This document shows positions 2,155-54,404 of a stretch of DNA of 64,000 bases, piece after piece. Position 1 is the stretch's first letter; every line of letters starts with the position of its first letter. The notes beneath the pieces are model-generated. The model was not told the DNA's origin and searched no databases. It saw nothing but the letters and a program-made list of their open reading frames with translations. The stretch is taken from the IMG/VR virus record IMGVR_UViG_3300005056_000001, positions 248,001 to 312,000 of that record; one strand, given 5' to 3'. A program made the translations under genes and the position numbers.

Positions 2155-2574
2155 ATTAATTTTATGCTATGTACCAATATTGTTGGTTGTGCCTAAAATC
2201 TATTAGTGGCATATAACGTTATTTGCCACTTTTTGGTAAATTTTACTGTATCAGCTAAAATCGGAAAAAAGCCTAATAACAGCTATACCACTCAACGCCT
2301 GTGTTTGTCGGCTGTTCGGTAGGGGGAATTTTTTGATTTTTTATCAGAAAAAAATGACCACTCTTGCACTTATCAGGGGAAACACGTGATTATTGGACAT
2401 CAAAAACACTTTTGCACGTGCAAAAATAAGCAAAAACTGTTTGAGCTTCGTGACGTTATAATATTAATACATACCACACAGTCGACGTATAAAGGGTTAC
2501 AGCCGATTTTTAAAAAATGTCATTTTTGGTGTCTACTATATAAAACAAAGAATACTTAATTAATAAATAGTAAT

Positions 2575-3501
2575 ATGAACAAATTAGAGAAAGTTTTATC
2601 AGAAATAAACAAGTGTTATGTCAATCGGATAACCTCGAATACATTCATAATTAATGAGGATTTTTGTGTGATATTGGCAGACAAATTAACATTGGATATT
2701 GGTACCTATAAACAACAAAAAGAAGGCTTGGTTAAACACGAGATTCCCGACGATTTATTGGTGCCTGATGGCCCCACAAAAACACTTGGCACAATCTCCC
2801 GAACAGACCTGTTGCATATTTATGAATGTACGGCACAAAACACAGCCAATGGTTGGAGCGATATCGTGTTGTCAGACGGTTTTTTGATTGGCACAGACAA
2901 TATTGGCTTGATGGCCTGCAAACTTATCACAACAAAGAACCTTCCTAGGCCATGTTTGTTCCCCAAGGAGTTATTGCCATTCGTCACAATGGTTTTGGAC
3001 GACAAGCCTATCGGGGTTTTTGTAAAAAAATATAATGGCAAGTTTGTGTTTGGCCTCACAGACGGAAGCAACGGTGTTTTATATCTAAAGAAGTCTCCAT
3101 ATACAAACACGCTCCCTCCCATCAACAAGATCGCACCGAGTTTCAGTGTGGGGGAATATATCAAGATAGGCAAGACCGAGCGTAACTTTATTGGATCGCT
3201 AAACAATCGTTTGTGTTTGCTCCATCAAGATTATATTCGTTCGAACGAAAGAAAAATAAAGTGTCCAATCAAAAAAGGAAAGGAGAACACAACATGGCAC
3301 AGCAACCGAATGTTGAAATTTGCAACCCTGCGGACACCGAAATCTGTTACTGACCATACATACCCAACCATCGGCAAGGAGGTGACAACAGTCAAATTTA
3401 TACCCAATGATCTGCTAAAATTAATTGGTGACCAAGACTGTTTGTTGAGATGGGGCTTGCCTATCAAGGACGAAATGCTTTTGTATGTGGAATATTTGTA
3501 A
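2575..3501 (+). CDS. hypothetical protein, possible DNA pol III beta-clamp-like fold
   Basis: LIGTDNIGLM resembles the clamp motif vATDghRL, and LPPINKIAP resembles yPdy.rviP. Weak. Confidence 0.35.
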   Translation: MNKLEKVLSEINKCYVNRITSNTFIINEDFCVILADKLTLDIGTYKQQKEGLVKHEIPDDLLVPDGPTKTLGTISRTDLLHIYECTAQNTANGWSDIVLSDGFLIGTDNIGLMACKLITTKNLPRPCLFPKELLPFVTMVLDDKPIGVFVKKYNGKFVFGLTDGSNGVLYLKKSPYTNTLPPINKIAPSFSVGEYIKIGKTERNFIGSLNNRLCLLHQDYIRSNERKIKCPIKKGKENTTWHSNRMLKFATLRTPKSVTDHTYPTIGKEVTTVKFIPNDLLKLIGDQDCLLRWGLPIKDEMLLYVEYL

Positions 3502-3568
3502 TGATTTAGTACATAACAAGAAGCCCGACACAAGATTTTATATAAACAGATTTTACGTTCTGTAAAAC

Positions 3569-3922
3569 ATGACAGTAGCAGTCCGCAACAAAAATAACAT
3601 GGAAAAAACAATACAGGCAGCAAAGTACAAGTTCATAGAACTCATGAAGGGTTCTTTGTTTAAGGACGACAAACCCTCGTCATCAAGGATTTTTGGGTAT
3701 GTAATGATGCTCATAATTTTCTTGTTTTCCGTGGTATTTATTGCCACCGAAATAGGAAACGCCATACTTTCTTGGAAAAACGGAAATGTTTATGTACCTT
3801 CATGGCAAACGATTACATTTTTTGGGATGTGTTTGACGCAAAAGTTGACATTACTTGGGATTTACAAAAAAGCAGAGAGTCTTATTCCTAAAAAAACAAT
3901 CGAAAAAAAGCCTGTCCAATAA
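3569..3922 (+). CDS. putative holin / two-TM membrane protein
   Basis: DDKPSSSRIFG followed by two hydrophobic segments and a basic C-terminus; GTACATA box at 3509-3515. Confidence 0.45.
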   Translation: MTVAVRNKNNMEKTIQAAKYKFIELMKGSLFKDDKPSSSRIFGYVMMLIIFLFSVVFIATEIGNAILSWKNGNVYVPSWQTITFFGMCLTQKLTLLGIYKKAESLIPKKTIEKKPVQ

Positions 3923-3972
3923 CAAAAGGACTCACAGGTTAATGAGAATTACATAACTAAACATTGAAATAA

Positions 3973-4584
3973 ATGAGACGAGTTTTTAGATCATCACAAT
4001 ACATTCCTGTTAATATCATACAGGGTGACGATGCCGACAAATGGAACGAGAAGATCTCTGATGGTCGCCATGAGTATGTGATTAGACAACTAGATCAAGG
4101 AATTGATTACAACACGAAAACCGAAGACCTTCCAACCAATTACAACAAATACGAATCCGAGGATGGTATGCACGTTTTAGCATACGGAAAGTATTCTAGT
4201 TTTGTGGGGTTGTACAAAGAAGCAAAGTACAAGTACTTTGACAGCGATTGGTCTTGGAGCGGTCTAGGGGCTGCCCAAATAGAGGATGCTGTTGGTGTTT
4301 TTTCACATAAAGATGTCCGTAATTATTACTACATGTTCCCGCTTAGTGACTATGACAAGAACGAATTTTCTTATATAAACCTAAGAGACAATGAGGGACT
4401 ATTCAGAGTCGAAACAGAAAGAATGAAATTTGGAGGATTTAGACCCCTTGTTAAGGTCAATGTGGCACGTGGGCTTATATACTTCATAGAAGACATGGAT
4501 GTTGAACCTATATCTTTTGAAAAAAAAGGAACCAAGGTGCAATTTATGAGACTCAATCTTTCACAATCCTACATGTTGCAGTAG
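3973..4584 (+). CDS. hypothetical protein (possibly virion-associated)
   Basis: 203-aa ORF in a late-type cluster; variant box TTACATA upstream. Confidence 0.7.
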   Translation: MRRVFRSSQYIPVNIIQGDDADKWNEKISDGRHEYVIRQLDQGIDYNTKTEDLPTNYNKYESEDGMHVLAYGKYSSFVGLYKEAKYKYFDSDWSWSGLGAAQIEDAVGVFSHKDVRNYYYMFPLSDYDKNEFSYINLRDNEGLFRVETERMKFGGFRPLVKVNVARGLIYFIEDMDVEPISFEKKGTKVQFMRLNLSQSYMLQ

Positions 4585-4634
4585 CATAAACTACAAAAAA
4601 CAAAATATACTTAAATCAGTCAACAACCATCAAC

Positions 4635-5819: not shown

Positions 5820-5842
5820 TATTGGTACATATTTAAAAAGAT

Positions 5843-6679
5843 ATGGCTATTACAACTCCCGAAGAATTTCTTGCCAACAGAACCTTGCCGACAGTAAGAC
5901 CTGTTGATGCCGCATTCATTCAAGACATCATGAATGAACTGAACGAGGAATGTGGTCTTTCTGTAAATATTGACCCAAAAAAAATATTGCGACAAATTCG
6001 CAAGGTTGCCCGATATGTCTATAAGCATTACCAATACATGACTCTCCAACAAAAGGTGGCACTATTAAGATACGAAGACTTCAAGGATAGTTATGCGGCC
6101 AATGGTGGTATGTATGCAACCGTAACGCTCCCAAATTCAATCGAGGGGCTGTGGGGCATAAGTCCTGCAAATAATGGGTCATACGGCACATCTTCTAGGA
6201 TTTTAGACATTCCGTTATTGCGCTCGGTATCACTCACACAGGCAGCAGGCGGTTTTAGTATACAGACCAATGCGGCCAATCAATATAATTATTCTGTGTC
6301 TGATGCCACAATTGCACTCTACGAACAGGCCTCCTATCAGAATCATTTTCAGTCGGGGTTCCCGTTTAGTTTTTCTCATGCAAGCAAGGAGTTGGTAATC
6401 AGGCCCAAGGTAAGACAATCATGTGGTGTCATATTGGGCGTTTATGTTCAGACAGACATATCAAACCTATACAACGATTATTATTTCAGGGAGCATGTGA
6501 TGGGTGAATGCATGATTAGTGCTGCCCGAATTTTTGGAACATTTGACATTGAGTTGGGTGGTGGTGCCACGATTAATTGGAAGGACATAAAAGACGACGG
6601 AAGAGAAAAGGTTGACGAATGCAAAGACCACTATAAAACGACGACATTTATGCCAAAAACATTTTTCAAGGGCAAGTAG
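5843..6679 (+). CDS. neck protein (T4 gp13-like)
   Basis: C-terminal ARIFGTFDIELGGGATINWKDIKDDG matches the gp13 motif (LPGGvtinG..I..eg); GTACATA at 5825-5831. Confidence 0.75.
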   Translation: MAITTPEEFLANRTLPTVRPVDAAFIQDIMNELNEECGLSVNIDPKKILRQIRKVARYVYKHYQYMTLQQKVALLRYEDFKDSYAANGGMYATVTLPNSIEGLWGISPANNGSYGTSSRILDIPLLRSVSLTQAAGGFSIQTNAANQYNYSVSDATIALYEQASYQNHFQSGFPFSFSHASKELVIRPKVRQSCGVILGVYVQTDISNLYNDYYFREHVMGECMISAARIFGTFDIELGGGATINWKDIKDDGREKVDECKDHYKTTTFMPKTFFKGK

Positions 6680-6680
6680 T

Positions 6681-6730
6681 TTTTGCCTAACTCTCGGTTC
6701 TTGGAGTCGATAACCGTGAGTTAGGCAAAA
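6681..6730. terminator. long inverted repeat downstream of the neck gene
   Basis: ttttgcctaactc-tcggtt...aaccgt-gagttaggcaaaa. Confidence 0.55.
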
Positions 6731-6801
6731 ATATGGTAACTAAACAAAAAAATGTTCGATAATTTTTATAATTATCGAACATTTTTTTGTTACATTTGTT
6801 C

Positions 6802-7812
6802 ATGGAATACACAACAGAAGAACACAAACGCCTTGATTTAATATTTAGTGACAACCTAGAATTGGTCAAAGAATTAGAAAAAGGCAACCCGACAGGGGTA
6901 TTTGCCAAGTTGTCTGTCGATTTTATCGACCTTATAAATTTAACAGGCAAGGGTTTTGAGGATGTCTATCTCTTGGATAATGTCGATTCTTTGCTCTATA
7001 ACATGAACCACATACCCGAATGTGTGTTCATGTTACGAAACCTAAAACGGTTGGTGTGGGACGAGAAACACTTAACAGAAATCCCTCAAGGAATTGGAAA
7101 GCTAGTCAATCTCGAGTACCTATCCTTGGCGTTCAACGAAATATCAACACTTCCCGACTGCATGTCCAACCTAAAGAAGTTAACACACCTTGAACTCAAA
7201 GGAAATAAAATTGTAGACTTTCCACGGTCTATTTTTGACATGCCCTCATTGACGTTTCTATCACTTAGCGGGAATGAAATCAAAAACATACCACAGGAAA
7301 TTGGACAATTAACAAGTCTACATACTATTATGATTTACAGTAATAGACTAACATCTCTCCCAAATTCATTGTCTATACTGCCCAACCTTAGAAGCTTGCT
7401 CATTAAACATAACAAGATTAAAAACCTGCCATCAGACTCGCATAACTTGTCGGGTCTTACCTTTCTTTCTTGGGGTGACAATGGACTGACAGAATTCCCG
7501 ACCGAAATCAGGAACCTAACAAACCTAGAAACATTATACCTAGACGATAATAATATAAAAACAGTCCCTGATTGGATAAGCGAACTCACAGAATTAGATA
7601 TGTTTAATTTGTCGGATAACAACATTACACAGCTCCCCGACTCTTTGTGCAAAATGGATTTGTTGGGGTCTTTGTCAGTCACCCGAAACCCTATTACACA
7701 CCTGCCCCAAGCAATCGGAAGTATTAAAAGTCTATATGAGTTATATATTTATTCGACAAACATAACGGTATGTCCACAAATCGACGGTGTGGAGGTTCAT
7801 TTTTTGCAATAA
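6802..7812 (+). CDS. leucine-rich repeat protein
   Basis: About eleven 23-aa repeats LxxLxxLxLxxNxI/LxxLPxxI. Likely start MEYTT at 6802, directly after an inverted repeat (6747-6788) and a TACATTTG box (6791-6798). Confidence 0.95.
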   Translation: MEYTTEEHKRLDLIFSDNLELVKELEKGNPTGVFAKLSVDFIDLINLTGKGFEDVYLLDNVDSLLYNMNHIPECVFMLRNLKRLVWDEKHLTEIPQGIGKLVNLEYLSLAFNEISTLPDCMSNLKKLTHLELKGNKIVDFPRSIFDMPSLTFLSLSGNEIKNIPQEIGQLTSLHTIMIYSNRLTSLPNSLSILPNLRSLLIKHNKIKNLPSDSHNLSGLTFLSWGDNGLTEFPTEIRNLTNLETLYLDDNNIKTVPDWISELTELDMFNLSDNNITQLPDSLCKMDLLGSLSVTRNPITHLPQAIGSIKSLYELYIYSTNITVCPQIDGVEVHFLQ

Positions 7813-12798: not shown

Positions 12799-13152
12799 TT
12801 ATTGTTCAGTATCCCCATTATATATGGCATCCAAAGAGACACCATCCCGTTCCAATTGGGGGTAAGAGTTAATTATTAGATTGGTAATTGTTGTAGTGTA
12901 ATAAGAAAATGGGTTCTTTCTATTGAAATTGAATTTATAATACCTTGTTAACAACCCTTCCATGGCAAACGAAACGACATCGTTTCTGTCTTCTTCTATG
13001 ACATATTTAAAAAGATCCGCCAATTTTTGGGACATGTCATAAAACATTTGCACAAGTTTTCGGGTTGGTTCCCCTTGCCACATAGACATAACCATTTCAT
13101 TGTACATCACTTGTTTGTCGATATCGAGTTTGTCGATCTTTTTTTTTGACAT
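12799..13152 (-). CDS. late-transcription sigma factor (T4 gp55-like)
   Basis: EDRNDVVSFAMEGLLTRYYKFNFNRKNPFSYYTT is the gp55 region-2 motif (FdpeksNPFaYfT). Likely start MSKKK at 13152. Confidence 0.8.
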   Translation of the reverse strand: MSKKKIDKLDIDKQVMYNEMVMSMWQGEPTRKLVQMFYDMSQKLADLFKYVIEEDRNDVVSFAMEGLLTRYYKFNFNRKNPFSYYTTTITNLIINSYPQLERDGVSLDAIYNGDTEQ

Positions 13153-13321: not shown

Positions 13322-13470
13322 GCTATTTTGTTTTTGTTAAATAATGTTATATAATGTACAATAATCATATTTTTTGTTTGTATTGTACATAATACACAAC
13401 GTTAAAAAATCCGTTTAGTACATATATCGAAGATTTTTTAATAATTAATAGCACACAAAATATTTGCCTC

Positions 13471-15893: not shown

Positions 15894-15930
15894 AAAAACC
15901 GAACCAATACATTATTGGTTCGGTTTTTTT
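15894..15930 (+). terminator. intrinsic terminator
   Basis: aaaaaccgaaccaata-cat-tattggttcggttttttt. Confidence 0.85.
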
Positions 15931-15983
15931 AATGGTACATACCCTATATTAGCAATTATTTACTATCTTTGAAAAAAATATAA

Positions 15984-17045
15984 ATGAAATTACATAAATT
16001 GTCAGAACGTCTACAGGGTGGTGCGTTCATGGAAGAAAGAGGAATCGAAATAAATTACGGCAACAAAATAAAATACAGCCAACATCAGGGTGATCGTGAA
16101 ATGGCAATTGAACGACTAACAGAATTGTCCATACGTACCATCATGAATCTTTCTTCTAGCAAGATCAAGGGCACCATGAAGGAGTTGTATGACTTGGGTG
16201 TGGCACATGGTGTTCAGAACCTTGTCATTTCCATGGCAAAAGAGTACAATGACAAATATGTCAATACGGATGTTATTACAGACGGTGTCGTGGGTGTTAT
16301 TGAGCGGTACGAGAATAACGGACATCCGTTGTTCCCAAAAAGCCCCAACGGTAAGGCACAGGTCAAACAATATACAATTAGATACCACGAGGGTTCGTAT
16401 CAATACGACAACGAGGTATTCAAGGGTACACTAAAGGATGCCAAGGAGCATGCCAAGTCAAAATTGCAAGAACTGCATGATTATCGTAACGGTAAACTAG
16501 AAGACAGTATTTGGGCAACATTTAGCGATTCAGAGGACGGCGACGAGATGTTTGATGAGCGTGTTAGTATGAAAAGAGGTAAATTTGGCGAAGCACTAAG
16601 CGGGGCAGAATATATAATCGGACAAATACAGCTTGGAAATTCCTTGTATCTATATATGGATGAATATTTAAAACTTGATTTAAAGAGTCAGCGTTTGGTT
16701 ATGGCGGCAAATGCGAAATATGTGAAAGACAAGGAAGCTGCCGAAGACGAAGATTTAAAAAGAAAGGATATTTCTCCTAAAGGTCAAAAGACTCTCGATT
16801 TGTTAATTGCAAGATACAACGATGATCTTGACTATTTAAAAGACCGAATTACTAGAGGCGCACCTAGAGACAAACGAAGAGTGTTTAAGTCGTTTATGGC
16901 AAGATGGGCTGTGTACGATGATGAAATGCACAGTTTACTTAGGGATGAATACGGTCTTAAATGGTCTTATAATCAAAAGGCAAATGATATATATAAGAAG
17001 ATTGAGACGTATGAACCAATCAAGCACAAATATATAGGAAGATAG
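15984..17045 (+). CDS. hypothetical late protein (possible internal head protein)
   Basis: 353 aa; GTACATA at 15935-15941; N-terminal MKLHKLSE looks like a protease-cleaved leader. Confidence 0.6.
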   Translation: MKLHKLSERLQGGAFMEERGIEINYGNKIKYSQHQGDREMAIERLTELSIRTIMNLSSSKIKGTMKELYDLGVAHGVQNLVISMAKEYNDKYVNTDVITDGVVGVIERYENNGHPLFPKSPNGKAQVKQYTIRYHEGSYQYDNEVFKGTLKDAKEHAKSKLQELHDYRNGKLEDSIWATFSDSEDGDEMFDERVSMKRGKFGEALSGAEYIIGQIQLGNSLYLYMDEYLKLDLKSQRLVMAANAKYVKDKEAAEDEDLKRKDISPKGQKTLDLLIARYNDDLDYLKDRITRGAPRDKRRVFKSFMARWAVYDDEMHSLLRDEYGLKWSYNQKANDIYKKIETYEPIKHKYIGR

Positions 17046-17070: not shown

Positions 17071-17101
17071 AAAAAAAGCCTGTCAAATGACAGGCTTTTT
17101 T
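17071..17101. terminator. bidirectional terminator
   Basis: aaaaaaagcctgtca-aa-tgacaggcttttt between convergent genes. Confidence 0.85.
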
Positions 17102-19401: not shown

Positions 19402-19588
19402 AAAATATATCGGTTTGTGTAAAATCAAAAGCAATTTTTAAACCGTAACACAAAAATAGCCTTTTAATTTAATAATATCAAATACATAACGGTTTTTTAT
19501 AAAAAAAATTAAAATCAATGGGATTGTACACATTTAAAATGTACATATTTTGACTAATTTTTTAATAAACAACTAAAACGATACGCTC

Positions 19589-20080: not shown

Positions 20081-20182
20081 AGACTTTGTACATAGATCAC
20101 ATAACGGTCTAATAATTATACTATATTGCCCAAAAACCGTTATAACCAAAACAACTATAATTTTACATACATAACAAAAAAT

Positions 20183-22096: not shown

Positions 22097-22239
22097 GTAT
22101 ATATTTTTTTGTTTAAATAAATAACTTACGCAATAATAACAAAAATATTCAAGAATCAAAAATAAATATACACTTTTAACTTTTTTGTACATAAACAACA
22201 CACAATTATTGTAACATCTCAACAACAAACCTATGATCT

Positions 22240-22902
22240 ATGGCAGGATTGATAAATAATGCTATCGTTAAGCTAAAAGGGTTTTTTAACAAGATAAAAG
22301 ACCGCTATCGGTTTAATTTTTTAACCGAGGCAGAAAAAGCATTTAAAAGCGCACCAAACAAACCAACCGAGGCACTTAGATGGTTCAAGAAGATTAAGAC
22401 CACCAAGGAGTACATGCACGGGAGGAAACCGCTAAAGGCAGGGCGATTGTATTGGTTTAAATACCAAAATCCTATCCATGAAAAAACACTTCCTTATTGG
22501 GACATGGAACCATTGGTTATTATGAGTTCAACATTTACGGTCGCCAATGGCGTGCGTAGACAATTGGGACTTAACCTACATCTTTTGCCGCCACATATAA
22601 GGGTTCGTGTGTTTGCCGATATTTGGGCGGCACACCAATCAACATTTAAGAAGGGTCTGAACGACAAAAAAAATCAGCCAACGTTCATGTTCTCATGGAA
22701 AACATTAAAAAGTAAAATCGGGCCGTATGGCGGAGACTTTGCGATTCGTATGTATGCCCCCGAACGAATAAAGGGCGCAATTGAGTTCGCCACAGAAGAT
22801 TGGCCAAAAGCGGTACATATACCGAGTAGACGCTACAAGAACACAAACCTAGTCAAACTCAACGAGGAGTTTAAAAAATTTCTTAAATCAAAAAGAAGCT
22901 AG
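22240..22902 (+). CDS. DNA end protector protein (T4 gp2-like)
   Basis: GRLYWFKY..TLPYWDMEPLVI..GLNLHLLPP..R is the gp2 signature; GTACATA at 22187-22193. Confidence 0.85.
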   Translation: MAGLINNAIVKLKGFFNKIKDRYRFNFLTEAEKAFKSAPNKPTEALRWFKKIKTTKEYMHGRKPLKAGRLYWFKYQNPIHEKTLPYWDMEPLVIMSSTFTVANGVRRQLGLNLHLLPPHIRVRVFADIWAAHQSTFKKGLNDKKNQPTFMFSWKTLKSKIGPYGGDFAIRMYAPERIKGAIEFATEDWPKAVHIPSRRYKNTNLVKLNEEFKKFLKSKRS

Positions 22903-24758: not shown

Positions 24759-24816
24759 TATAAGTAAATAGTACATACCGTAACATTATTGATTAAAAAT
24801 AACAATTTCAGATAAG

Positions 24817-26918: not shown

Positions 26919-26955
26919 AAAAAGCACCAAATAACCGTATTTGGTGCTTTTTTTT
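26919..26955 (+). terminator. intrinsic terminator
   Basis: aaaaagcaccaaata-accg-tatttggtgctttttttt. Confidence 0.85.
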
Positions 26956-26970: not shown

Positions 26971-26977
26971 GTACATA
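26971..26977 (+). promoter_or_regulatory. candidate late promoter GTACATA (representative copy, before major capsid)
   Basis: The same heptamer precedes at least 16 late/virion genes on the coding strand (see findings). Confidence 0.75.
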
Positions 26978-34264: not shown

Positions 34265-34383
34265 TTATTGATATAATTTGAGAGTGTACCACAATTCGAC
34301 CTTGTGTATTTTTAAGTTATGTACCTTTAAAGGAACAAATATTCATGGTTCTGTGTTTACAAAACGAACAAAAAACATTAAAC

Positions 34384-35044: not shown

Positions 35045-35245
35045 TTACAAATTTTTGTCAAGGTACAAAAAGAATTTCCATATATAAAAACATAGCAATG
35101 TCCATAGACACCACACACCAAGCATTACAGACACGGTACATTCGGTTTTAATAATATACAGGCCCCAACATAACAAAATGACAAGCGAAGCCCAAAACAA
35201 GCGTTTCCACGCTCCTGTCTTGGATAGTATGTCATAGTGTTTCAT
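35045..35245 (-). CDS. small two-TM membrane protein (late)
   Basis: Two hydrophobic helices; GTACATA at 35262-35268. Confidence 0.55.
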   Translation of the reverse strand: MKHYDILSKTGAWKRLFWASLVILLCWGLYIIKTECTVSVMLGVWCLWTLLCFYIWKFFLYLDKNL

Positions 35246-35326
35246 GTTGGGGTGAATGTTTTATGTACAAAATGTATATATGTCGTTTTTTAATGATGCG
35301 ATACAGGTATGCTTAAAGAGGATGTT

Positions 35327-47197: not shown

Positions 47198-47254
47198 TAT
47201 ATATTTTTTGTCTTTTTATATATGTACAAAAACAAAAGAGTTGAAGGTCTTTAA

Positions 47255-48008: not shown

Positions 48009-48551
48009 TTAAATTGAGGTTTCGGGGAAATATTCGCCTGCAACATTCACTTCCATCATCTTCAGTTCCGAATCAGCAATGTCGGCATCAAAAATTCCTG
48101 CACCAAATGCACCAAAGAACATACAATTTTTCAATGTTCGCTCATACACCTTGACATTATTTCGCAAGAAATATTCAACATTGATATCGAAGGCATAGTC
48201 TCTTTTTAGTCCTAGCTCGAATGTGTTGTGATTATTCATGGCATTTTTTGCAGCCAAGAGTGATGTGTAAATATACAGATCATTCTCCTCGTTAAAGTTT
48301 AGACTTAGAGTAATGGCCAACTCCTGTTTTGTGGAAATTTTGTTTTTTGCAAAAAGACGAATTGCCCCCTGATCTTGCTCGGCAAGTTCTGTTTCGGGAA
48401 TTTGCCAACCCGTACAAGACATTACGTGCTCTGTAATCAATGGCTCAAAGGCTATTGTGGGCGAGAAAATAAAAGTAAGACGGAAGTTGTCGGTTTGGAA
48501 TCCCTCCCATTTATTCAAACCTGCCGCCGTCTGTGTGATATGACTTAACAT
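48009..48551 (-). CDS. tail tube protein (T4 gp19-like)
   Basis: 180 aa directly downstream of the sheath; tube-fold pattern; GTACATA at 48612-48618. Confidence 0.8.
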   Translation of the reverse strand: MLSHITQTAAGLNKWEGFQTDNFRLTFIFSPTIAFEPLITEHVMSCTGWQIPETELAEQDQGAIRLFAKNKISTKQELAITLSLNFNEENDLYIYTSLLAAKNAMNNHNTFELGLKRDYAFDINVEYFLRNNVKVYERTLKNCMFFGAFGAGIFDADIADSELKMMEVNVAGEYFPETSI

Positions 48552-48625
48552 AATAGATGTATTGTAGGGGTTATTTAAAATATTGCCCGAACATATGTTC
48601 GGGCTTTAAGGTATGTACTATTTGA

Positions 48626-51577
48626 TTATACGATTATAACAGTACCGATTTCGCTTGTGCTATTGAATGTTGTTGTTCGTATAACAACCTTCTCGGCAAC
48701 GCTGCTAACAATGACTTCAATGTCTATTACCAACATTTGTGCAGCAAGAACGTCACCATCGTTGTTGGTCGAATCAACTATAGATCTTCCGAATGTAAGT
48801 GCACCATTTGCCAAGTATCGTTCCAATACAGAATCCACACGGGCCTTAACTGTTGCACGCAATTGTTCGGTATTCAACTTGCCCAATGCACCCTTTGCGA
48901 TAGGTGTCACTTCTAGTTGTAGCACATTCAATGTTTCACGTACATGGAGCGATTTAAGTGCCGTGCCGTCCTGATTCAAGGTTCGGTTTCCCATTACAGT
49001 AAAGTCTTGCATAATAGGATTTACACCAAGACGTTCTAGGATTGCCCTGTCATCATTGGTCAATTCCATGCCGACCTTTCCGAGTCCTGATGCAGCAACC
49101 CGAAAATCTGATCCGAAAATCGGGATGTGTCCTTGTCCTGCCAACCATTTAGCAGCAAACAAGTTACTCACGATTGGAGCCATAGGCATTTTAATGTCTC
49201 TGCCATTGTCTTTGATCGTTGCATTAGGAAAATAAGTTGCACCATAAGCCGCACCTTGTTGTTTTGTCGGGAGCGTGAATAATTGACTATAAGGCAACAA
49301 TAGATTACCACCATCCTCAAAATGTTCTATGTTAATTTTGGTGTCTGTTGGTGAATCCTTGAAAAATGGATCCGTAGAGTTCTTGAATGTTTTTACAAAT
49401 GGCGTGTTTATCAAAGATGTAATGCCACCCTGACGGTCTCTCGCCACAACAGTAAACTGTGATTTTATATTTGCTGTTGGGTAACTCTCAAACGAATCAA
49501 CCAAATAACTGTATGTTTCATATTCCCTGTCGGTTAGTAAGTCCAATAATTGTCCGCTAATTGTACCATTTAACACATCTTCCAATCGTGTTGGTGTACC
49601 GTTAACAAATTGGTCATTACGAACAGCAAGCCCTTTCATTGAAATTGGATTAAATTGCTTTGTGGTATCTACAACCCTATTCAACTGTAACATGTAGTTG
49701 GCATTGGTAGAAGGCTCACGATACAGAATAATCTCAAGTGAGTTGTCTAGTGTCAAGACGGAAAAATTGCTCCTTGCACCAACAGATGTTGGTACGGATA
49801 CATCGTCATCTCCGCCATACAACGGACGATCAAACTCGGCCACGAAGTAGTTTAGCTCGACCGAAAATGTTGGATTCGCCAAAACAAGTGCCGCAATCGC
49901 AGCGTCATCAATATCAGGGAACGCTATGACGGTTCCACCAACTTGATCTTTTGGATAACCAAAAGTCGGGTCGGTCGGGTCAATGCCTGTGTAGTTATAT
50001 TCAACAGGCAGTCCGAGACTAACACCACCCAAGTATTCCCAATTACCGCTAATAGTATTAAATGTGGCCAATGGAGCCCCAACACTATCAAGCGGAAACG
50101 TCGAAGTGTGTAGTCCGCCAAAAACAACCTTTTTCCCAATAAAATTGAAACGTGTTACTGTTGTTGGGTTGCCATCCATTCCAAGGAATAATGTGCCTGT
50201 TTTTACGGCTGTGGCATTCGTCATGATACACGACCGTCTTGGGTCGTAATCTTGGCCACTAATAGAGATAACGTTTGAGCTAGGTTTCGAGTAATCAAAA
50301 TCTGCCACGACAGGTGTCTCTAACCCTAAAAGCATGGGATTGTTATGGACAATATGATTTCCAATAATTGTAAAATTATTTACATCTTCCTGTGCCGTTA
50401 TTTTTCCGCTCTCAAGGACGTATGCCTGTGACAACGTATTACTATCGTTTGACAACGAGTTATAGTTTGTCGTCACAAAGTCGGCATCAATACTCATTGC
50501 CGAATACTTGTCGCTTGGTGTGTAGTCCATGTTTGAACCCGTCCAATCAATAGTTTTTGTTCCATAAAACTCCATTGGGATAGGACGTTTGCCGTTAGAC
50601 AGCGCAGATGCCGTTGCAACACTTGAAAGTTCTGCCAATGTCGGAGGTTCAAAATCTGCCGCATTATCCAATACATCTTCGTTTATTTTACAGATCAATC
50701 CTGTCAAATCAGAGTCGATATTAATCAAGTTGTCAATCGCCAAGGTTGCAGATGATTGGTTTGTTAATGTTGAAATCAACGAACCTTCATAAGAATTTAA
50801 AAAGCGTGCATCCTCTTCGTTTGATAAACGTTGTAACGCATCAATATCACGTCCATTTGCATCAATAACATCGTTTCTAAGGTTTCCCGCAGAATTAAAC
50901 AGGTAAGCCACAGAGGATGGAATACCAAATGTCAAATCAATGTTAAACACAAAAACCTCCACAAACGTGTCATTCAACAACATTGTTGGCTCTATGGATT
51001 CAGGCAGGGCTTGGTCAAGCAATTCGTAATATTCCCCAATAGTTTGTTTGTAAATAACATTCTTTAGTGGTCGCACAAAAACGGTTAGGTCTTTATTTCC
51101 GATATTTACAATATGCAACAAATCAGTGTCGTTGCTAGGAATGATATTTTCTTCATCAACAAACCAATTTCTGTCGGTATTAAAGTAGTTGGTATATGGT
51201 CTGTCAGAAAGCACACTGTTTCCGTTGTCATCCATTTGTATGTTAAGACCAATTGCTTGTACAACATCCAATGTGTCATCATAACTTCTGACATTCATTA
51301 CCTTTATCGGGCCTTGCGCAAGCATGATCTCGGCAGAACGATGGAAAAAACCGCCTCTACGTTCTAGTCGTCTGTCAATATCACCAAATAACTGAACAAA
51401 TTGTGGGTATGTATCAATACGAATTATTTTATTGGTCACACCTTTTTTGGATTGTCCAATCAATAGTCTATATCCATCAAGCTCTGCCGCTGCACTGAGT
51501 GGCGGAGAAGTGCGCTCAATAAAGTACAAACCCGCCGCTTGTCTACTTATTTGTTGTAATCTAACACTTAGTGCCAT
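48626..51577 (-). CDS. contractile tail sheath protein (T4 gp18-like)
   Basis: AGLYFIE, IGQSKKG, FVQLFG, LERLGVNPI, GNRTL, LHVRE; GTACATA at 51616-51622. Confidence 0.9.
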   Translation of the reverse strand: MALSVRLQQISRQAAGLYFIERTSPPLSAAAELDGYRLLIGQSKKGVTNKIIRIDTYPQFVQLFGDIDRRLERRGGFFHRSAEIMLAQGPIKVMNVRSYDDTLDVVQAIGLNIQMDDNGNSVLSDRPYTNYFNTDRNWFVDEENIIPSNDTDLLHIVNIGNKDLTVFVRPLKNVIYKQTIGEYYELLDQALPESIEPTMLLNDTFVEVFVFNIDLTFGIPSSVAYLFNSAGNLRNDVIDANGRDIDALQRLSNEEDARFLNSYEGSLISTLTNQSSATLAIDNLINIDSDLTGLICKINEDVLDNAADFEPPTLAELSSVATASALSNGKRPIPMEFYGTKTIDWTGSNMDYTPSDKYSAMSIDADFVTTNYNSLSNDSNTLSQAYVLESGKITAQEDVNNFTIIGNHIVHNNPMLLGLETPVVADFDYSKPSSNVISISGQDYDPRRSCIMTNATAVKTGTLFLGMDGNPTTVTRFNFIGKKVVFGGLHTSTFPLDSVGAPLATFNTISGNWEYLGGVSLGLPVEYNYTGIDPTDPTFGYPKDQVGGTVIAFPDIDDAAIAALVLANPTFSVELNYFVAEFDRPLYGGDDDVSVPTSVGARSNFSVLTLDNSLEIILYREPSTNANYMLQLNRVVDTTKQFNPISMKGLAVRNDQFVNGTPTRLEDVLNGTISGQLLDLLTDREYETYSYLVDSFESYPTANIKSQFTVVARDRQGGITSLINTPFVKTFKNSTDPFFKDSPTDTKINIEHFEDGGNLLLPYSQLFTLPTKQQGAAYGATYFPNATIKDNGRDIKMPMAPIVSNLFAAKWLAGQGHIPIFGSDFRVAASGLGKVGMELTNDDRAILERLGVNPIMQDFTVMGNRTLNQDGTALKSLHVRETLNVLQLEVTPIAKGALGKLNTEQLRATVKARVDSVLERYLANGALTFGRSIVDSTNNDGDVLAAQMLVIDIEVIVSSVAEKVVIRTTTFNSTSEIGTVIIV

Positions 51578-51636
51578 GATTTATATTGTTTATAGGTTTT
51601 TAAAATATTATGTTATATGTACTATTCAAAATATGA

Positions 51637-53535
51637 CTACGAATCTTCATATTTAAGCCTATTGCGCAAATCATCAAAATTATAGGCAAACCTCCAATCA
51701 ACACCCGCCATTTTTTTTTGTGCATAATATTGCTCAATGAAAGCCGTAAGTCCACTATTCCTTGACAGTATCGTAAAACCTAGATGTAAGTATGGCACAA
51801 CATTGTCGTCATTGCCCAATTCTGCTTGGTACGTTCCTTTCTTGTTTACTTGGAAAAATCCTATTTGTTCTATAGTTTTCTCGTCGGATATGTCAAATAA
51901 ATTATTTTCCATTGCAAGCTTGAATGCATTGACAGACACTTTTTTAATCGCCCTGTTTGTTGTTAATCCTACCGCACGTCCGCCAACCCGTTTTCCTTTC
52001 GTGTTTCGGCTACTCCGTTCACCGTACCTAAGAAAACAGGCAGGAGGGATAAAAATATTATTCTTCCTCATTGCCTCGTTTATTTGAGTCATGAAGTAGT
52101 CACCATAGGTGTTTCGTTCTATGATGATTCTAATATTTTCAAACGTTGTGAATGTTGCCAACGTATGCACGATAAGTGTAGGCATCTCGGTTTCTAACGG
52201 TATGTCGTTTGCCTCCAAAACAAATTCTTGCCTGAAGGATATTTTACTTTTGAAATTCCCGTCCTTTCGGTGTTGGACAGACAAAAAATGTGCGGTTGTT
52301 GAATCGCCGCCAATACCCTCTGCAAGGTCTATGATCACCACATAGTGTTTATCCCTTAGTTTTTCGGCATCGGGCCTAAATCTAATCTTCGGACTGTATT
52401 TCTCAATACCCCTAAATCTTAAGTCATGGGTTTTGAACGGAACTTTTTTCTCGTCCAACTCACGCATTGTAAATGGAGACAACAGCTTATTCAGTTGGGT
52501 ATCAAAAGACATCTCAAACTGAATCTTGAATTTTTGAAGCGTAATCTTACTGATCATTTTCTTTGCCCACTCAACATCACGTGAGGGTATTTGCCACCAA
52601 TAAACCGTTGATGGTCTGTAAGAGTTTTTACCCTTGACAGCCCCGTCATAAAGCTCATAGAATAAGTCTTTACCATTTGGAGTACTTGTGATAATAAGCT
52701 TGGGATTCTCTACTGCTGCCTGTGCAGGTGCCGCATTTGACAGAAATTCTGCCTGCTTTTCCTTGTTCCCATCAAAGCACAGTGCAAACTCATCAATATA
52801 CAGGGTGTGCACGGTAAGACCGTTGATTGCATCCTTGGTACAGGGTGCCGCCAATATCGAACAACCGTTATCGAACTTGATGTTCTTCTCGTTCCATATC
52901 TCAACACCTGCTTTCATATAAAAAGGAAGTCTGTAATAAATTTCCTTTATTTTGTCCAATACCTCATTGGATGTCTTTTGTTTGTTGGCAAGTATTGCAA
53001 CATTTCTATTCTTGTGAAACATGACATTCCACAGTATATATATAGCAGCCGTTGTTGTTTTTGAGGCCTGCCTCGACCATGCCTGTATGTGGTCATCGTG
53101 TCGTAGGTATGACACCAATTGCTTTAGCTGATGTGGAAATAAATTACATAGCTGATAACTTTGGTCACGTTGTTTTAGGTATGCAAAATTACGGGCAAAA
53201 TGCAACATGTTGGTCATGCACGAAACCATCTCCAATGTTTCGCTATTGGACGGTCGATACACCAACTCTGCCCGTTTTAGTTTTGGGTTATTGTCAAAAA
53301 ATGGGGTTTTCTTAAGGGGCTGACCAACAGCAATCGCATCAATGGCCAATTTTGCACTCTTTGATGTCCATACAATTGCATCCACAGCACCGTTGCCTGT
53401 AAGTGGCTTACGTGGATCATAATGTTTTATGCCACCCTTATCTGCCTTTATTTTCTTTCGGGCTTTTTTTCTTGCACGCTTGACGGGCTTTGTGACCGTC
53501 GTGGTGTTTTTTGCCTTCTCGGGTGGTATAATCAT
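51637..53535 (-). CDS. terminase large subunit (T4 gp17-like)
   Basis: LFPHQ, SRQASKTT (Walker A), ILANK, YIDEFA (Walker B), ITSTPNG, DLAEGIGGD, IERN..G, NDDNV. Confidence 0.95.
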   Translation of the reverse strand: MIIPPEKAKNTTTVTKPVKRARKKARKKIKADKGGIKHYDPRKPLTGNGAVDAIVWTSKSAKLAIDAIAVGQPLKKTPFFDNNPKLKRAELVYRPSNSETLEMVSCMTNMLHFARNFAYLKQRDQSYQLCNLFPHQLKQLVSYLRHDDHIQAWSRQASKTTTAAIYILWNVMFHKNRNVAILANKQKTSNEVLDKIKEIYYRLPFYMKAGVEIWNEKNIKFDNGCSILAAPCTKDAINGLTVHTLYIDEFALCFDGNKEKQAEFLSNAAPAQAAVENPKLIITSTPNGKDLFYELYDGAVKGKNSYRPSTVYWWQIPSRDVEWAKKMISKITLQKFKIQFEMSFDTQLNKLLSPFTMRELDEKKVPFKTHDLRFRGIEKYSPKIRFRPDAEKLRDKHYVVIIDLAEGIGGDSTTAHFLSVQHRKDGNFKSKISFRQEFVLEANDIPLETEMPTLIVHTLATFTTFENIRIIIERNTYGDYFMTQINEAMRKNNIFIPPACFLRYGERSSRNTKGKRVGGRAVGLTTNRAIKKVSVNAFKLAMENNLFDISDEKTIEQIGFFQVNKKGTYQAELGNDDNVVPYLHLGFTILSRNSGLTAFIEQYYAQKKMAGVDWRFAYNFDDLRNRLKYEDS

Positions 53536-53711
53536 TTTCGCATTGTTTTATGATAATATATCGCAGCAACCATTTGTGGTCGCACATTGATACATTAGGG
53601 TTATATATTTTTTGATATATGTACAAAACATTTTACTTATTTGCACGTTCGGATATTTTTACCTAACTTGGCACAACAGAACATACATTACAATAACAGA
53701 TACAGGATAAT

Positions 53712-53978
53712 ATGACAACACAAGAAAAAATATTACATAATCTTAAGAGTCGTGGTCTCGGACACAACGATGCGATAGACGCATTGGACTATGCTAGTGT
53801 AAATCTTGTTATAGACTTGTCAGTGTGTGCACATACATTATCACAGCCTCACTTTGGAGATATTTTACATCAGTGCGATGTTTACATAGGAAGGTGGATA
53901 GGATTATACAGACCAAATAAATGGTACATTATAAATTTCCCTAAACTAACGATCAACAAGTATTTAATAGAACATTGA
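53712..53978 (+). CDS. hypothetical protein
   Basis: 88-aa ORF. Confidence 0.65.
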   Translation: MTTQEKILHNLKSRGLGHNDAIDALDYASVNLVIDLSVCAHTLSQPHFGDILHQCDVYIGRWIGLYRPNKWYIINFPKLTINKYLIEH

Positions 53979-53988
53979 ACAAGAAAAA

Positions 53989-54327
53989 ATGAAAAGAACA
54001 ATTGTAACATTATGTGGCTCCACAAAATTTGAAAAGGAGTTTCACGAAGTAAACAAACAATTAACAGCAAGAGGACATATTGTAATTTCTTGTGGTATAT
54101 TTGGACACACAATGCCACCCAAAGAAAAGGAATTGTTTTTCTCTACAACAGTAAAGGCAAAGTTGGATTGTCTCCATAACGACAAGATCCTGATGTCGGA
54201 TTGTATTCTAGTTATTGATGTTAAGGGCTACATAGGGTCAAGCACAAAAAAAGAAATCGACTTTGCCAAGAAGCATAAAAAGGGTGTGTATTATTACTCA
54301 AAAGATGTTATTGATTCTATTGGTTGA
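53989..54327 (+). CDS. nucleoside 2-deoxyribosyltransferase-like (NDT/DUF4406-type Rossmann) protein
   Basis: TLCGSTKF..GHIV..HNDKILMSDCILVIDVKGYIGSSTKKEIDFA. Confidence 0.7.
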   Translation: MKRTIVTLCGSTKFEKEFHEVNKQLTARGHIVISCGIFGHTMPPKEKELFFSTTVKAKLDCLHNDKILMSDCILVIDVKGYIGSSTKKEIDFAKKHKKGVYYYSKDVIDSIG

Positions 54328-54341
54328 TTGTCCAAACAGAT

Positions 54342-54378
54342 AAAAAAAGCGTTTTACTTTGGTAGAACGCTTTTTTTT
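54342..54378 (+). terminator. intrinsic terminator
   Basis: aaaaaaagcgttttac-tttg-gtagaacgctttttttt. Confidence 0.8.
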
Positions 54379-54404
54379 GTACATATCAAAAAACCCAATA
54401 GTTA

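What the first reader, a model, noticed from the sequence alone, without database searches (positions are those of the whole stretch)
2168..54385. GTACATA: candidate late promoter replacing T4 TATAAATA
Seen on the coding strand about 11-90 nt upstream of: 2154 (2168-74), 3569 (3509), neck 5843 (5825), 13471 (13385, 13418), 15984 (15935), 19589 (19541), 20183 (20088), gp2-portal (22187), protease (24771), capsid (26971), 34264 (34318), 35245 (35262), 47197 (47221), tube (48612), sheath (51616), terminase (53618) and 54405 (54379). It often lies right after a terminator and has no -35 element. Known: T4 gp55 reads a single -10 box. Inference: the 117-aa gp55-like sigma here reads GTACATA, and the motif predicts which hypothetical ORFs are late or virion genes.
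Basis: partly seen in the sequence, partly recalled or inferred. Interest (0 to 1): 0.6.

Follow-up and report, generated by a model that had tools for sequence, protein, structure and literature searches.

The report
Variant T4-type late promoter GTACATA
A 7-base signal, GTACATA, sits just upstream of the virion genes of this 368-kb marine jumbo phage and is most likely its late promoter, a two-base variant of the classic T4 late promoter read by a miniature phage sigma factor.

Summary
All 18 listed GTACATA sites exist (24 in the window against 8.6 expected). Genome-wide, GTACATA is the most over-represented upstream 7-mer: 53 sense copies within 100 nt of ORF starts against 6.3 expected, and 13 times denser in intergenic than in coding DNA. 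It is strand-specific, has no -35-like partner, and an A peak follows 5 nt after it. Every motif-preceded gene with an annotation is a virion or packaging gene. Replication orthologues lack the motif.

A relative (capsid 67% identical) has the same top motif before the same orthologues, in otherwise unalignable spacers. PAU, PTm1 and MA9V-1 use ATACATA instead. Lak-A1 and probably pT24 use the T4-type ATAAATA. The same pipeline recovers TATAAATA in T4.

The 117-aa ORF at 12799-13152(-) is the genome's only sigma-like gene. Its family profile matches T4 gp55 (E 3e-10; hhalign 97%). It lacks the gp55 helix-loop-helix but ends in SLDAIY, close to the gp55 clamp-binding SLDFLY.

Verdict: a new variant of a known kind. 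The two changes from TATAAATA fall at -12 and -9, two of the three bases gp55 flips into pockets. No transcript data exist, so late timing, start sites and the sigma-motif pairing are inferred.

The parts
12799..13152 (-). 117-aa gp55-type minimal sigma: a sigma region-2 domain plus a C-terminal SLDAIY tail. It has no GTACATA of its own on its strand.
   Evidence: Pfam Sigma70_r2 is sub-threshold at 19 bits, and this is the only such hit in the genome. A 60-member family profile matches T4 gp55 7d7c_F at E 3e-10; hhalign gives 97.2%, E 3.9e-11, over gp55 residues 4-118. The AF2 model (pLDDT 64.6) finds mostly sigma region-2 folds, with gp55 at TMq 0.62. PHROG 234 'late sigma' scores E 0.004. 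The tail resembles the gp55 SLDFLY.
2168..2174 (-). GTACATA 13 nt before ORF 1567-2154(-) (195 aa, unknown)
   Evidence: In G001 a GTACATA lies at the start of the orthologue's ORF call.
3509..3515 (+). GTACATA 53 nt before ORF 3569-3922 (117 aa, unknown)
   Evidence: The G001 orthologue also carries the motif.
5825..5831 (+). GTACATA 11 nt before ORF 5843-6679, a head-tail adaptor / neck protein
   Evidence: PHROG 211; orthologue of the PTm1 'neck protein'
13385..13391 (+). First of two GTACATA copies before ORF 13471-15870 (799 aa, unknown); 79 nt upstream
13418..13424 (+). Second GTACATA before ORF 13471-15870; 46 nt upstream
   Evidence: The G001 orthologue has the motif 42 nt upstream.
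15935..15941 (+). GTACATA 42 nt before ORF 15984-17045 (353 aa, unknown), 8 nt after the start of the T-run of a strong hairpin at 15894-15928
19541..19547 (+). GTACATA 41 nt before ORF 19589-20080 (163 aa, unknown)
20088..20094 (+). GTACATA 31 nt before ORF 20126-20911 (261 aa, unknown)
22187..22193 (+). GTACATA 46 nt before the gp2-like DNA end protector gene 22240-22902; the portal gene 22941-24758 follows
   Evidence: PHROG 429, PHROG 213
22813..22819 (+). Uncertain: GTACATA inside the 3' end of the gp2-like gene, 121 nt before the portal gene. It is conserved in G001 but encodes the conserved peptide V-H-I, so coding constraint may explain it.
24771..24777 (+). GTACATA 39 nt before the prohead protease/scaffold gene 24817-26898
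   Evidence: PHROG 207. Orthologues in G001 (GTACATA) and in PTm1 and PAU (ATACATA) carry the motif.
26971..26977 (+). GTACATA 39 nt before the major capsid protein gene 27017-28924, 19 nt after the start of the T-run of hairpin 26919-26952
   Evidence: The gene is the reciprocal best hit of PAU gp156 'major capsid' (PMC5646251). The motif is conserved in G001, PTm1 and PAU.
34318..34324 (-). GTACATA 53 nt before ORF 30416-34264(-) (1282 aa, PHROG 31887, unknown function)
   Evidence: Conserved in G001, PTm1 and PAU.
35262..35268 (-). GTACATA 16 nt before ORF 35045-35245(-) (66 aa, unknown)
47221..47227 (-). GTACATA 23 nt before the tail protein gene 44807-47197(-)
   Evidence: PHROG 8763. Conserved in G001 and PAU.
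48612..48618 (-). GTACATA 60 nt before the tube-like gene 48009-48551(-). It lies between the sheath stop codon and the hairpin 48604-48585.
51616..51622 (-). GTACATA 38 nt before the tail sheath gene 48626-51577(-)
   Evidence: PHROG 34521. Conserved in G001, PTm1 and PAU.
53618..53624 (-). GTACATA 82 nt before the large terminase gene 51637-53535(-)
   Evidence: The PAU orthologue carries ATACATA.
54379..54385 (+). GTACATA 19 nt before ORF 54405-57617 (1070 aa, PHROG 29329, unknown function), 4 nt after the start of a terminator T-run

Best explanation
GTACATA (extended context W-W-T-D-GTACATA-N4-A-A-A) is the late-promoter element of this phage. It is a single -10-like box with no -35 partner.

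Proposed mechanism. The host (probably Bacteroidota) core RNA polymerase binds the phage's 117-aa gp55-type minimal sigma, encoded at 12799-13152(-). This holoenzyme melts the box and starts transcription about 5-6 nt downstream, at the conserved A-rich position. By analogy with T4, the sigma's C-terminal SLDAIY tail probably tethers the enzyme to a sliding clamp loaded during replication, which would couple late transcription to DNA replication.

Register. Aligned with T4 TATAAATA (-13 to -6), the element reads D-G-T-A-C-A-T-A. It differs only at -12 (A to G) and -9 (A to C). These are two of the three bases that gp55 flips out of the non-template strand into protein pockets.

Shown: the motif's existence, enrichment, orientation and conservation; its association with virion genes; the related motifs in relatives; and the gp55 homology of the ORF.

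Inferred: that it is a promoter, that it is late, where transcription starts, that this sigma reads it, and that a clamp is involved.
For: Statistics:
- Window: 24 copies against 8.6 +/- 2.9.
- Genome: top-ranked upstream 7-mer, 53 sense against 6.3 expected.
- Intergenic-only shuffles: 53 against 8.5 +/- 3.1. Density is 13-fold higher in intergenic than in coding DNA.
- Single-mismatch variants are barely enriched, and there is no upstream -35-like information.
- An A peak of 68-79% lies exactly 5 nt after the box in G000, G001, PTm1 and PAU.

Positive control: the identical pipeline on T4 ranks ATAAATA/TATAAATA first (30 of 65 copies upstream, 4.4 expected), followed by the known early -35 GTTTAC.

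Regulon:
- Named downstream genes are adaptor, gp2, protease/scaffold, capsid, sheath, tail protein and terminase, with portal following gp2. Outside the window they are baseplate hub, baseplate wedge and head closure.
- Orthologues of PTm1-annotated structural genes carry the motif 5 of 5 times. Orthologues of helicase, RNR, DNA polymerase, sigma and clamp loader carry it 0 of 5 times.

Conservation:
- G001 independently has GTACATA as its top upstream 7-mer: 31 of 46 copies, 2.7 expected.
- 18 of 72 reciprocal-best-hit pairs carry it in both genomes (Fisher p 3e-6), at similar spacing, with unalignable flanks.

Related motifs:
- PAU (62 of 102 copies), PTm1 (42 of 108) and MA9V-1 (21 of 44) have ATACATA as the leading discrete upstream motif (first in PAU and PTm1, third after two A-rich 7-mers in MA9V-1). 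GTACATA is not enriched in PAU or PTm1, and ATACATA is not enriched in G000 or G001.
- PAU orthologues of capsid, protease, sheath, tube, terminase and others carry ATACATA (p 0.012).
- Lak-A1 uses AATAAATA (38 of 68 copies, 3.4 expected). pT24 probably uses ATAAATA.

Sigma:
- It is the only Sigma70_r2-like ORF in the genome.
- No Rpb2, Rpb1 or T7-type RNA polymerase domain was found.
- Family profile against gp55: E 3e-10, hhalign 97.2%. The fold search hits are mostly sigma region 2.
- Each of the five related genomes has exactly one homologue, always with the C-terminal [VILF][SR][LIFY][DS]x[IV][FYL] tail.
- gp55 pocket residues F86 and T99 are conserved (F86 is C in PTm1) and Y97 stays aromatic (F in PAU and PTm1) (roles from PMC7892883).

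Other:
- A gp44-type clamp loader is encoded at G000:146986-148017.
- Four window copies lie 4-34 nt after the start of a strong terminator's T-run. That fits a DNA-level restart signal.
Against: - No transcriptome or 5'-end data exist for this phage. Only a few DNA metagenome runs hold part of it. Promoter activity, timing and start sites are unobserved.
- No gp45-type clamp was detected by Pfam and no gp33 homologue was identified. One candidate was rejected.
- The protein lacks the gp55 helix-loop-helix that chaperones the template strand, so the mechanism cannot be identical to T4.
- I found no simple co-variation between pocket residues and promoter bases. H95 is F in all five relatives whatever their -9 base. 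A small contig with GTAAATA (n = 4) has a pT24-like pocket.
- Pfam searches can miss the very divergent RNA polymerases of jumbo phages.
- About 10% of ORFs carry the motif, and many of these have no annotation, so 'all are virion genes' is unproven.
Confidence: 0.8

Rival explanations
1. GTACATA is a promoter, but it is read by something other than the 117-aa gp55 homologue. Candidates are an undetected, highly divergent phage-encoded RNA polymerase (phiKZ/AR9-like or a novel single-subunit enzyme) or a host alternative sigma.
For: Jumbo-phage RNA polymerases are often too divergent for Pfam, so the negative searches are weak. In particular, the T7-type search rang in no control genome. No residue-to-base co-variation ties the sigma to the motif.
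Against: - The phage belongs to the T4-like 'group 2' jumbo phages, which are reported to lack RNA polymerases and to carry minimal sigmas (PMC7824862).
- The motif differs from the gp55-read TATAAATA at only two positions, and natural intermediates exist in relatives that each have exactly one gp55 homologue.
- A host sigma would not explain lineage-specific switches among phages that all appear to infect Bacteroidota hosts.
Confidence: 0.08
2. GTACATA acts at the RNA level, as GUACAUA in the 5' leader. It would be an endonuclease processing site, a stabiliser or a translational signal rather than a promoter.
For: Strand specificity and a position upstream of start codons fit an RNA signal equally well. 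Primer-extension 5' ends cannot by themselves separate initiation from processing, a caution made for T4 in PMC2988020.
Against: - The spacing to the start codon ranges from 7 to 90 nt, which does not fit a translation signal.
- Several copies lie directly after strong terminators, where little read-through RNA is expected.
- The base-by-base kinship with the T4 DNA promoter, and the fixed A peak 5 nt downstream, fit initiation.
- Palindromic TATGTACATA copies sit between divergent genes and would serve both strands, as expected for DNA sites.
Confidence: 0.05
3. GTACATA is the operator of a phage DNA-binding regulator (activator or repressor) that works with a separate, weakly conserved core promoter.
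For: The motif is short and almost invariant, with half-palindromic content (GTAC). Some copies form a perfect 10-bp palindrome.
Against: - Most copies are not palindromic; the upstream context is T-rich, not TAT.
- No second conserved element is seen within 30 nt on either side.
- Neither an E. coli-type nor a Bacteroidota-type promoter accompanies it. The two motif classes rarely share a gene: 7 genes carry both, against 45 and 44 with one only.
Confidence: 0.05
4. The enrichment is a compositional or annotation artefact of AT-rich spacers.
For: Intergenic DNA is AT-rich (31% GC against 38% overall). My ORF map is a crude longest-ORF call.
Against: - Intergenic-only dinucleotide shuffles give 8.5 +/- 3.1 against 53 observed.
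- One-mismatch neighbours of similar composition are not enriched.
- The signal is strand-biased, 53 sense against 15 antisense.
- It is independently the top motif in G001.
Confidence: 0.01

Closest known systems
Bacteriophage T4 late promoter TATAAATA, read by gp55 with gp33 and the gp45 clamp
   Same: - A single -10-like box with no -35 element and an AT/A-rich start region.
- About 50 copies per genome, on both strands, in front of virion genes. T4 has about 50 listed sites (PMC2988020); this phage has 53-55.
- A phage-encoded sigma region-2-only factor with a hydrophobic C-terminal clamp-binding-type tail (PMC7892883).
   Different: - The sequence differs at -12 (G for A) and -9 (C for A), both of them bases that gp55 flips into pockets.
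- The sigma has 117 aa rather than 185 and lacks the helix-loop-helix.
- gp45 and gp33 homologues were not found.
- The host is probably a Bacteroidota bacterium, not an enterobacterium.
In-silico late-promoter variants in other T4-related phages: NATAAATA in cyanophages; a/gC at -13/-12 in Aeromonas phage Aeh1
   Same: These are lineage-specific drift of the gp55-type box, found computationally upstream of late-gene homologues (PMC2984593, PMC2988020).
   Different: Those variants keep the AAATA core. Here, and in PAU, PTm1 and MA9V-1, the core itself carries a C (TACATA). I found no paper describing GTACATA or ATACATA as a phage promoter.
ATACATA motif of PAU, PTm1 and Chryseobacterium phage MA9V-1
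   Same: Same TACATA core, same A peak 5 nt downstream, same orthologous late genes, and the same family of minimal sigma.
   Different: The first base is A there and G here, and the two forms are mutually exclusive. GTACATA is at background in PAU and PTm1, and ATACATA is at background in G000 and G001.
'Minimal sigma factor' of group 2 jumbo phages (Iyer et al. 2021, PMC7824862)
   Same: The 117-aa ORF belongs to this class. Homologues occur in PTm1, pT24, PAU, the Lak megaphages, huge uncultured phages and RsoM2USA.
   Different: In the passages I read, that paper lists the proteins but gives no cognate promoter. The promoter assignment is new here.

Membership tests
T4-type (gp55-dependent) late promoter | Single -10-like box with no conserved -35 element | tested here: met
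   In the information profile of 53 sites, only W-W-T-D immediately 5' of the box and A-A-A at +5 to +7 after it carry signal. E. coli-type -35/-10 pairs are at chance level.
T4-type (gp55-dependent) late promoter | Consensus TATAAATA | tested here: not met
   The consensus is (T/A/G)GTACATA, which matches 6 of 8 positions. [ACGT]TAAATA 7-mers show no comparable enrichment in G000 (at most 3.2-fold, against 7.9-fold for GTACATA). The natural intermediates ATACATA (PAU, PTm1, MA9V-1) and ATAAATA (Lak-A1, pT24) link the two forms.
T4-type (gp55-dependent) late promoter | Sits upstream, on the coding strand, of virion, packaging and lysis genes and not of replication genes | tested here: met
   Structural orthologues carry it 5 of 5 times; replication and nucleotide-metabolism orthologues 0 of 5.
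T4-type (gp55-dependent) late promoter | The phage encodes a gp55 homologue | tested here: met
   ORF 12799-13152(-). Profile against 7d7c_F gives E 3e-10; hhalign gives 97.2%.
T4-type (gp55-dependent) late promoter | Sliding clamp (gp45) and co-activator (gp33) present | tested here: inconclusive
   No Pfam gp45 hit and no gp33 found. A gp44-type clamp loader is encoded, and the sigma carries a clamp-binding-type tail.
T4-type (gp55-dependent) late promoter | Primary transcripts start about 6 nt downstream, late in infection and dependent on replication | not testable with these tools
   No RNA runs hold this phage. The only indirect support is the A peak 5 nt after the box in four genomes.
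gp55 late sigma family | Sigma region-2 homology domain with conserved -10 pocket residues | tested here: met
   Aligned to gp55 residues 4-118. F86, Y97 and T99 correspond to F74, Y84 and T86; H95 is F and N13 is K. 31 of 60 family members hit Sigma70_r2. The fold search hits are mostly sigma region 2.
gp55 late sigma family | Helix-loop-helix motif after region 2 | tested here: not met
   The region-2 alignment ends near residue 104, and only a 13-residue tail follows. All five clade members are 117-155 aa.
gp55 late sigma family | C-terminal sliding-clamp-binding motif | tested here: inconclusive
   The motif SLDAIY followed by acidic residues resembles gp55 SLDFLY-EAND and is conserved across the family. 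Binding was not tested and no clamp was identified.
Bacteroidota housekeeping promoter (TTTG ... TAnnTTTG) | -33 TTTG and -7 TAnnTTTG elements | tested here: not met
   GTACATA does not match this pattern. The bipartite pattern is separately and modestly enriched upstream of other genes: 2.6-fold in G000 and 5.8-fold in G001 and pT24.
Promoters of phage-encoded RNA polymerases (phiKZ/AR9-type or T7-type) | The phage encodes its own RNA polymerase | tested here: inconclusive
   No Rpb2_6, Rpb1_2 or T7 RNA_pol Pfam hits in the complete genome. Divergent enzymes could be missed, and the T7-type search rang in no control genome.

The most novel reading that the evidence does not exclude
Within one clade of Bacteroidota jumbo phages the gp55-type late promoter has been re-specified repeatedly at the flipped-out bases. 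On the six-protein tree the most parsimonious path is:
- ATAAATA (T4, Lak) to ATACATA (MA9V-1, PAU, PTm1);
- back to ATAAATA in pT24;
- on to GTACATA in this lineage.

This would be a natural series showing how a minimal, region-2-only sigma changes base specificity, including acceptance of a cytosine at -9. Because PAU DNA carries a partly modified cytosine (PMC5646251), that flipped C might even be read as a modified base. That would restrict late transcription to phage DNA.
Probability: 0.3. Interest if true: 0.75.

Novelty: new variant of a known kind. Interest (0 to 1): 0.55.

Why it matters
1. It gives a simple, testable rule for annotating this largely 'hypothetical' 368-kb genome and its relatives. 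About 50 GTACATA-preceded transcription units are predicted to be late or virion genes, including several very large unknown proteins of 799, 1070, 1282 and 1743 aa.

2. It assigns candidate late promoters to a neglected group of Bacteroidota jumbo phages and megaphages (PAU, PTm1, MA9V-1, pT24, Lak). I found none reported for them in the papers searched.

3. The three natural forms differ at exactly two of the three bases that gp55 inserts into pockets. Each form is paired with a single small sigma that can be expressed and swapped. This makes an attractive system for asking how -10-only promoter recognition evolves and how minimal a sigma factor can be.

Tried and rejected
- RNA evidence.
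- Direct BLASTP of the ORF against T4 gp55 was insignificant (E 0.026). A genome search with gp55 found nothing. A five-sequence profile found nothing relevant in the PDB. Homology emerged only after the exhaustive representative search, which I used because the family scans had left the protein open.
- Residue-to-base co-variation at the gp55 pocket positions gave no consistent rule across T4, pT24, PAU, PTm1, G000, G001 and a small GTAAATA contig.
- A wider locus harvest with the sigma alignment failed or gave only short contigs.
- gp45 clamp: Pfam gp45-slide_C and DNA_PPF gave no hit. T4 gp45 and gp62 found nothing by phmmer in any relative. The neighbours of the clamp-loader genes gave no shared candidate. 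DNA polymerase C-termini show no clear shared tail.
- gp33 candidate G000:318825-319178(-) was picked for its ISYDAFY tail. It has no family hit, and its only homologue lacks the tail, so I rejected it.
- 'Follows a terminator' as a defining property was rejected: 6 of 55 motif sites against 28 of 188 controls.
- The internal copy at 22813 as a portal promoter is left open, because it encodes a conserved peptide.
- Sequence searches of the capsid and tube candidates against the PDB were blank.

Full report
**What the window is.** The window is bases 248,001-312,000 of a complete 368,109-bp IMG/VR virus record with direct terminal repeats, 38% G+C. By large terminase its nearest named relatives are:
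- Tenacibaculum phage pT24 (46% aa identity);
- Tenacibaculum phages PTm1 and PTm5 (37%);
- 'Sphingomonas' phage PAU (31%). PAU's host is in fact a Sphingobacterium, a member of the Bacteroidota (PMC3738902).

The only public runs holding parts of the phage are seawater and subsurface DNA metagenomes. The window carries the T4-like morphogenesis block:
- gp2-like end protector, portal, prohead protease/scaffold, sheath and terminase;
- adaptor and tail protein;
- the major capsid gene, identified as the reciprocal best hit of PAU gp156 'major capsid' (PMC5646251).

It also carries a split family-B DNA polymerase.

**The observation.**
- The window has 24 copies against 8.6 +/- 2.9 in shuffles; none of 100 shuffles reaches 24.
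- The 18 listed copies lie 11-82 nt upstream of a same-strand ORF.
- In the whole genome there are 93 copies, 53-55 of them in the ~10% of intergenic sequence.
- Density is 1.395 per kb in intergenic DNA against 0.106 per kb in coding DNA.
- Shuffling the AT-rich intergenic DNA alone gives 8.5 +/- 3.1 copies against 53 observed.
- One-mismatch variants are hardly enriched.
- The context is W-W-T-D-GTACATA-N4-A-A-A, and nothing is conserved where a -35 element would lie.
- E. coli-type -35/-10 pairs are at chance level.

**Positive control.** The same script on the T4 genome ranks ATAAATA/TATAAATA first (30 of 65 copies upstream, 4.4 expected). The known early -35 element GTTTAC comes next. The method therefore finds a true gp55 promoter, with statistics like those seen here.

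**Which genes follow the motif.** Every motif-preceded gene that can be named is a virion or packaging gene.
- In the window: adaptor/neck, gp2, protease/scaffold, capsid, tail protein, tube-like, sheath and terminase.
- Elsewhere in the genome: baseplate hub, baseplate wedge and head closure.
- Orthologues of genes annotated in PTm1 as structural carry the motif in 5 of 5 cases.
- Orthologues of helicase, ribonucleotide reductase, DNA polymerase, the sigma itself and the clamp loader carry it in 0 of 5 cases.

**Conservation.** A 137-kb fragment of a relative (G001; capsid 67% identical, 34% G+C) independently has GTACATA as its top upstream 7-mer: 31 of 46 copies, 2.7 expected.
- Of 72 reciprocal-best-hit pairs, 18 carry the motif in both genomes (Fisher p 3e-6).
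- The spacings are often nearly identical.
- The flanks cannot be aligned.
- 18 is a lower bound, because some G001 ORF starts were over-extended across a motif copy.

**A graded series in relatives.** I fetched whole genomes and ran the same scan.
- PAU: the top 7-mer is ATACATA (62 of 102 copies upstream, 6.2 expected; TATACATA 44 of 52).
- PTm1: ATACATA (42 of 108).
- Chryseobacterium phage MA9V-1: ATACATA (21 of 44, 2.4 expected), third after two A-rich 7-mers.
- The G-form and the A-form are mutually exclusive. GTACATA is at background in PAU and PTm1, and ATACATA is at background in G000 and G001.
- PAU orthologues of capsid, protease, sheath, tube, terminase and others carry ATACATA.
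- Lak-A1 megaphage, with TAG read through, has AATAAATA (38 of 68, 3.4 expected).
- pT24 has neither TACATA form. Its late-gene orthologues tend to carry ATAAATA (10 of 23 against 5 of 32, p 0.03). This is weaker evidence than for the other genomes.
- All four TACATA-type genomes share an A peak (68-79%) exactly five bases after the box.

Aligned, T4 reads T-A-T-A-A-A-T-A, PAU reads T-A-T-A-C-A-T-A and this phage reads D-G-T-A-C-A-T-A.

**Order of events.** I built a maximum-likelihood tree of six concatenated virion proteins, rooted on T4. It gives (Lak, (MA9V-1, (PAU, (PTm1, (pT24, (G000, G001)))))) with supports 60/82/98/100/100. The most parsimonious reading is:
1. one A-to-C change at -9 early in the clade;
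2. a reversal in pT24;
3. an A-to-G change at -12 in the G000/G001 lineage.

With eight taxa and long branches this is a hypothesis, not a result.

**The sigma.** ORF 12799-13152(-) (117 aa; the database gene call starts at MSKK) scores below threshold on Pfam Sigma70_r2 (19 bits) and on PHROG 234 'late sigma transcription factor'.
- It is the only Sigma70_r2-like ORF in the genome.
- Because the family scans left it open, I ran the exhaustive representative search. It returned 249 relatives, mostly 110-140 aa.
- A 60-member profile matches T4 gp55 (PDB 7d7c chain F) at E 3e-10. hhalign gives 97.2% probability, E 3.9e-11, over gp55 residues 4-118.
- 31 of the 60 members hit Sigma70_r2.
- An AlphaFold model of moderate quality (pLDDT 64.6) retrieves mostly sigma region-2 domains, with gp55 giving the best query TM-score, 0.62.
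- Each related genome has exactly one homologue, next to the DNA polymerase genes in PTm1 and PAU.
- The protein ends shortly after region 2, so it lacks the gp55 helix-loop-helix.
- Every family member ends in a hydrophobic motif followed by acidic residues. Here it is SLDAIY, very like the gp55 clamp-binding SLDFLY (PMC7892883).

**Link to the gp55 structure.** In the gp55 open complex, the non-template bases at -12, -9 and -8 are flipped into pockets: -12 stacks on Y97, -9 contacts N13 and H95, and -8 contacts T99 (PMC7892883).
- In the register above, this phage differs from T4 only at -12 and -9.
- It keeps the A at -8.
- The equivalents of F86, Y97 and T99 are conserved, while H95 is F and N13 is K.
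- I could not derive a residue-to-base rule. H95 is F in all five relatives whatever their box, and a small contig with GTAAATA has a pT24-like pocket.

**What is missing.**
- No RNA data exist for this phage.
- No gp45-type clamp or gp33 was found, although a gp44-type clamp loader is encoded.
- No phage RNA polymerase domain was found. This agrees with the published view that these 'group 2' jumbo phages use host polymerase with minimal sigmas (PMC7824862), but Pfam can miss divergent enzymes.

**Comparison with the literature.** T4 has about 50 late sites that adhere tightly to TATAAATA, have no -35 element and have an AT-rich start region. Related in-silico consensus sequences are known for KVP40, 44RR and S-PM2 (NATAAATA), and a -13/-12 variant is known for Aeh1 (PMC2988020, PMC2984593). 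Full-text searches found no paper that describes GTACATA or ATACATA as a phage promoter.

**Verdict.**
- I put about 0.9 on 'transcription signal of the virion-gene regulon'.
- I put about 0.8 on the full statement, that it is a late promoter read by the 117-aa gp55 homologue with host polymerase.

Timing, start sites, the sigma-box pairing and clamp dependence remain to be shown experimentally.

Noticed in passing
window 48585-48618 (-): The GTACATA before the tube-like gene sits between the sheath stop codon and a GC-rich hairpin (48604-48585). The predicted tube transcript would therefore begin at the foot of that hairpin. G001 has the same layout with a different hairpin sequence. This could be a 5'-terminal stabilising stem or an overlap of promoter and terminator.
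   Followed up: partly
G000:185549-185558 and 364095-364104; G001:46970-46979, 70323-70332, 107885-107894: The perfect palindrome TATGTACATA carries the motif on both strands. At 185.5 kb it lies between divergent motif-preceded genes, which suggests back-to-back overlapping late promoters.
   Followed up: partly
G000:363377-364700 (outside the window, near the terminal repeat): An ORF-poor stretch of about 1.3 kb holds five GTACATA copies on both strands with no obvious downstream gene.
   Followed up: no
window 17100-19434 (-): The family-B DNA polymerase is split into two adjacent ORFs (502 aa and 277 aa). PTm1 annotates an intein-containing split polymerase, and PAU and pT24 are also split.
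   Followed up: partly
window 58544-59437 (-) and 6787-7812 (+): Leucine-rich-repeat proteins: the first hits Pfam LRR_14 and LRR_8, and both hit PHROG 6688. This is unusual phage cargo. Neither has a GTACATA.
   Followed up: no
L106-L114 (Prevotella phage Lak-A1, 140-320 kb): Coding density of a longest-ORF map rises from 0.66 to 0.91 when TAG is not a stop. With that code, AATAAATA is the top upstream 8-mer (38 of 68 copies). It is a T4-type candidate late promoter for the Lak megaphages, which also carry a homologue of the minimal sigma.
   Followed up: partly
whole genomes of pT24, PTm1, MA9V-1 (L015-L038, L095-L105): TATATTTG, which matches the Bacteroidota -7 element TAnnTTTG, is strongly enriched upstream of other genes. 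These are probably the early, host-sigma promoters. In G000 the bipartite TTTG...TAnnTTTG pattern is only 2.6-fold enriched.
   Followed up: partly
window 2168, 5825; G000:216262, 363377 and others: About a quarter of motif copies lie only 7-17 nt from the start codon, and the spacing is conserved at 13/13 nt in G000/G001 for two genes. This implies leaders of only a few bases, i.e. near-leaderless late mRNAs, which is plausible for a host group that does not rely on Shine-Dalgarno pairing.
   Followed up: no
PAU (literature) and the C of TACATA: PAU DNA contains a partly modified cytosine (PMC5646251). The only C in the late box is the base predicted to be flipped into the sigma's -9 pocket. 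Whether it is modified is unknown.
   Followed up: no
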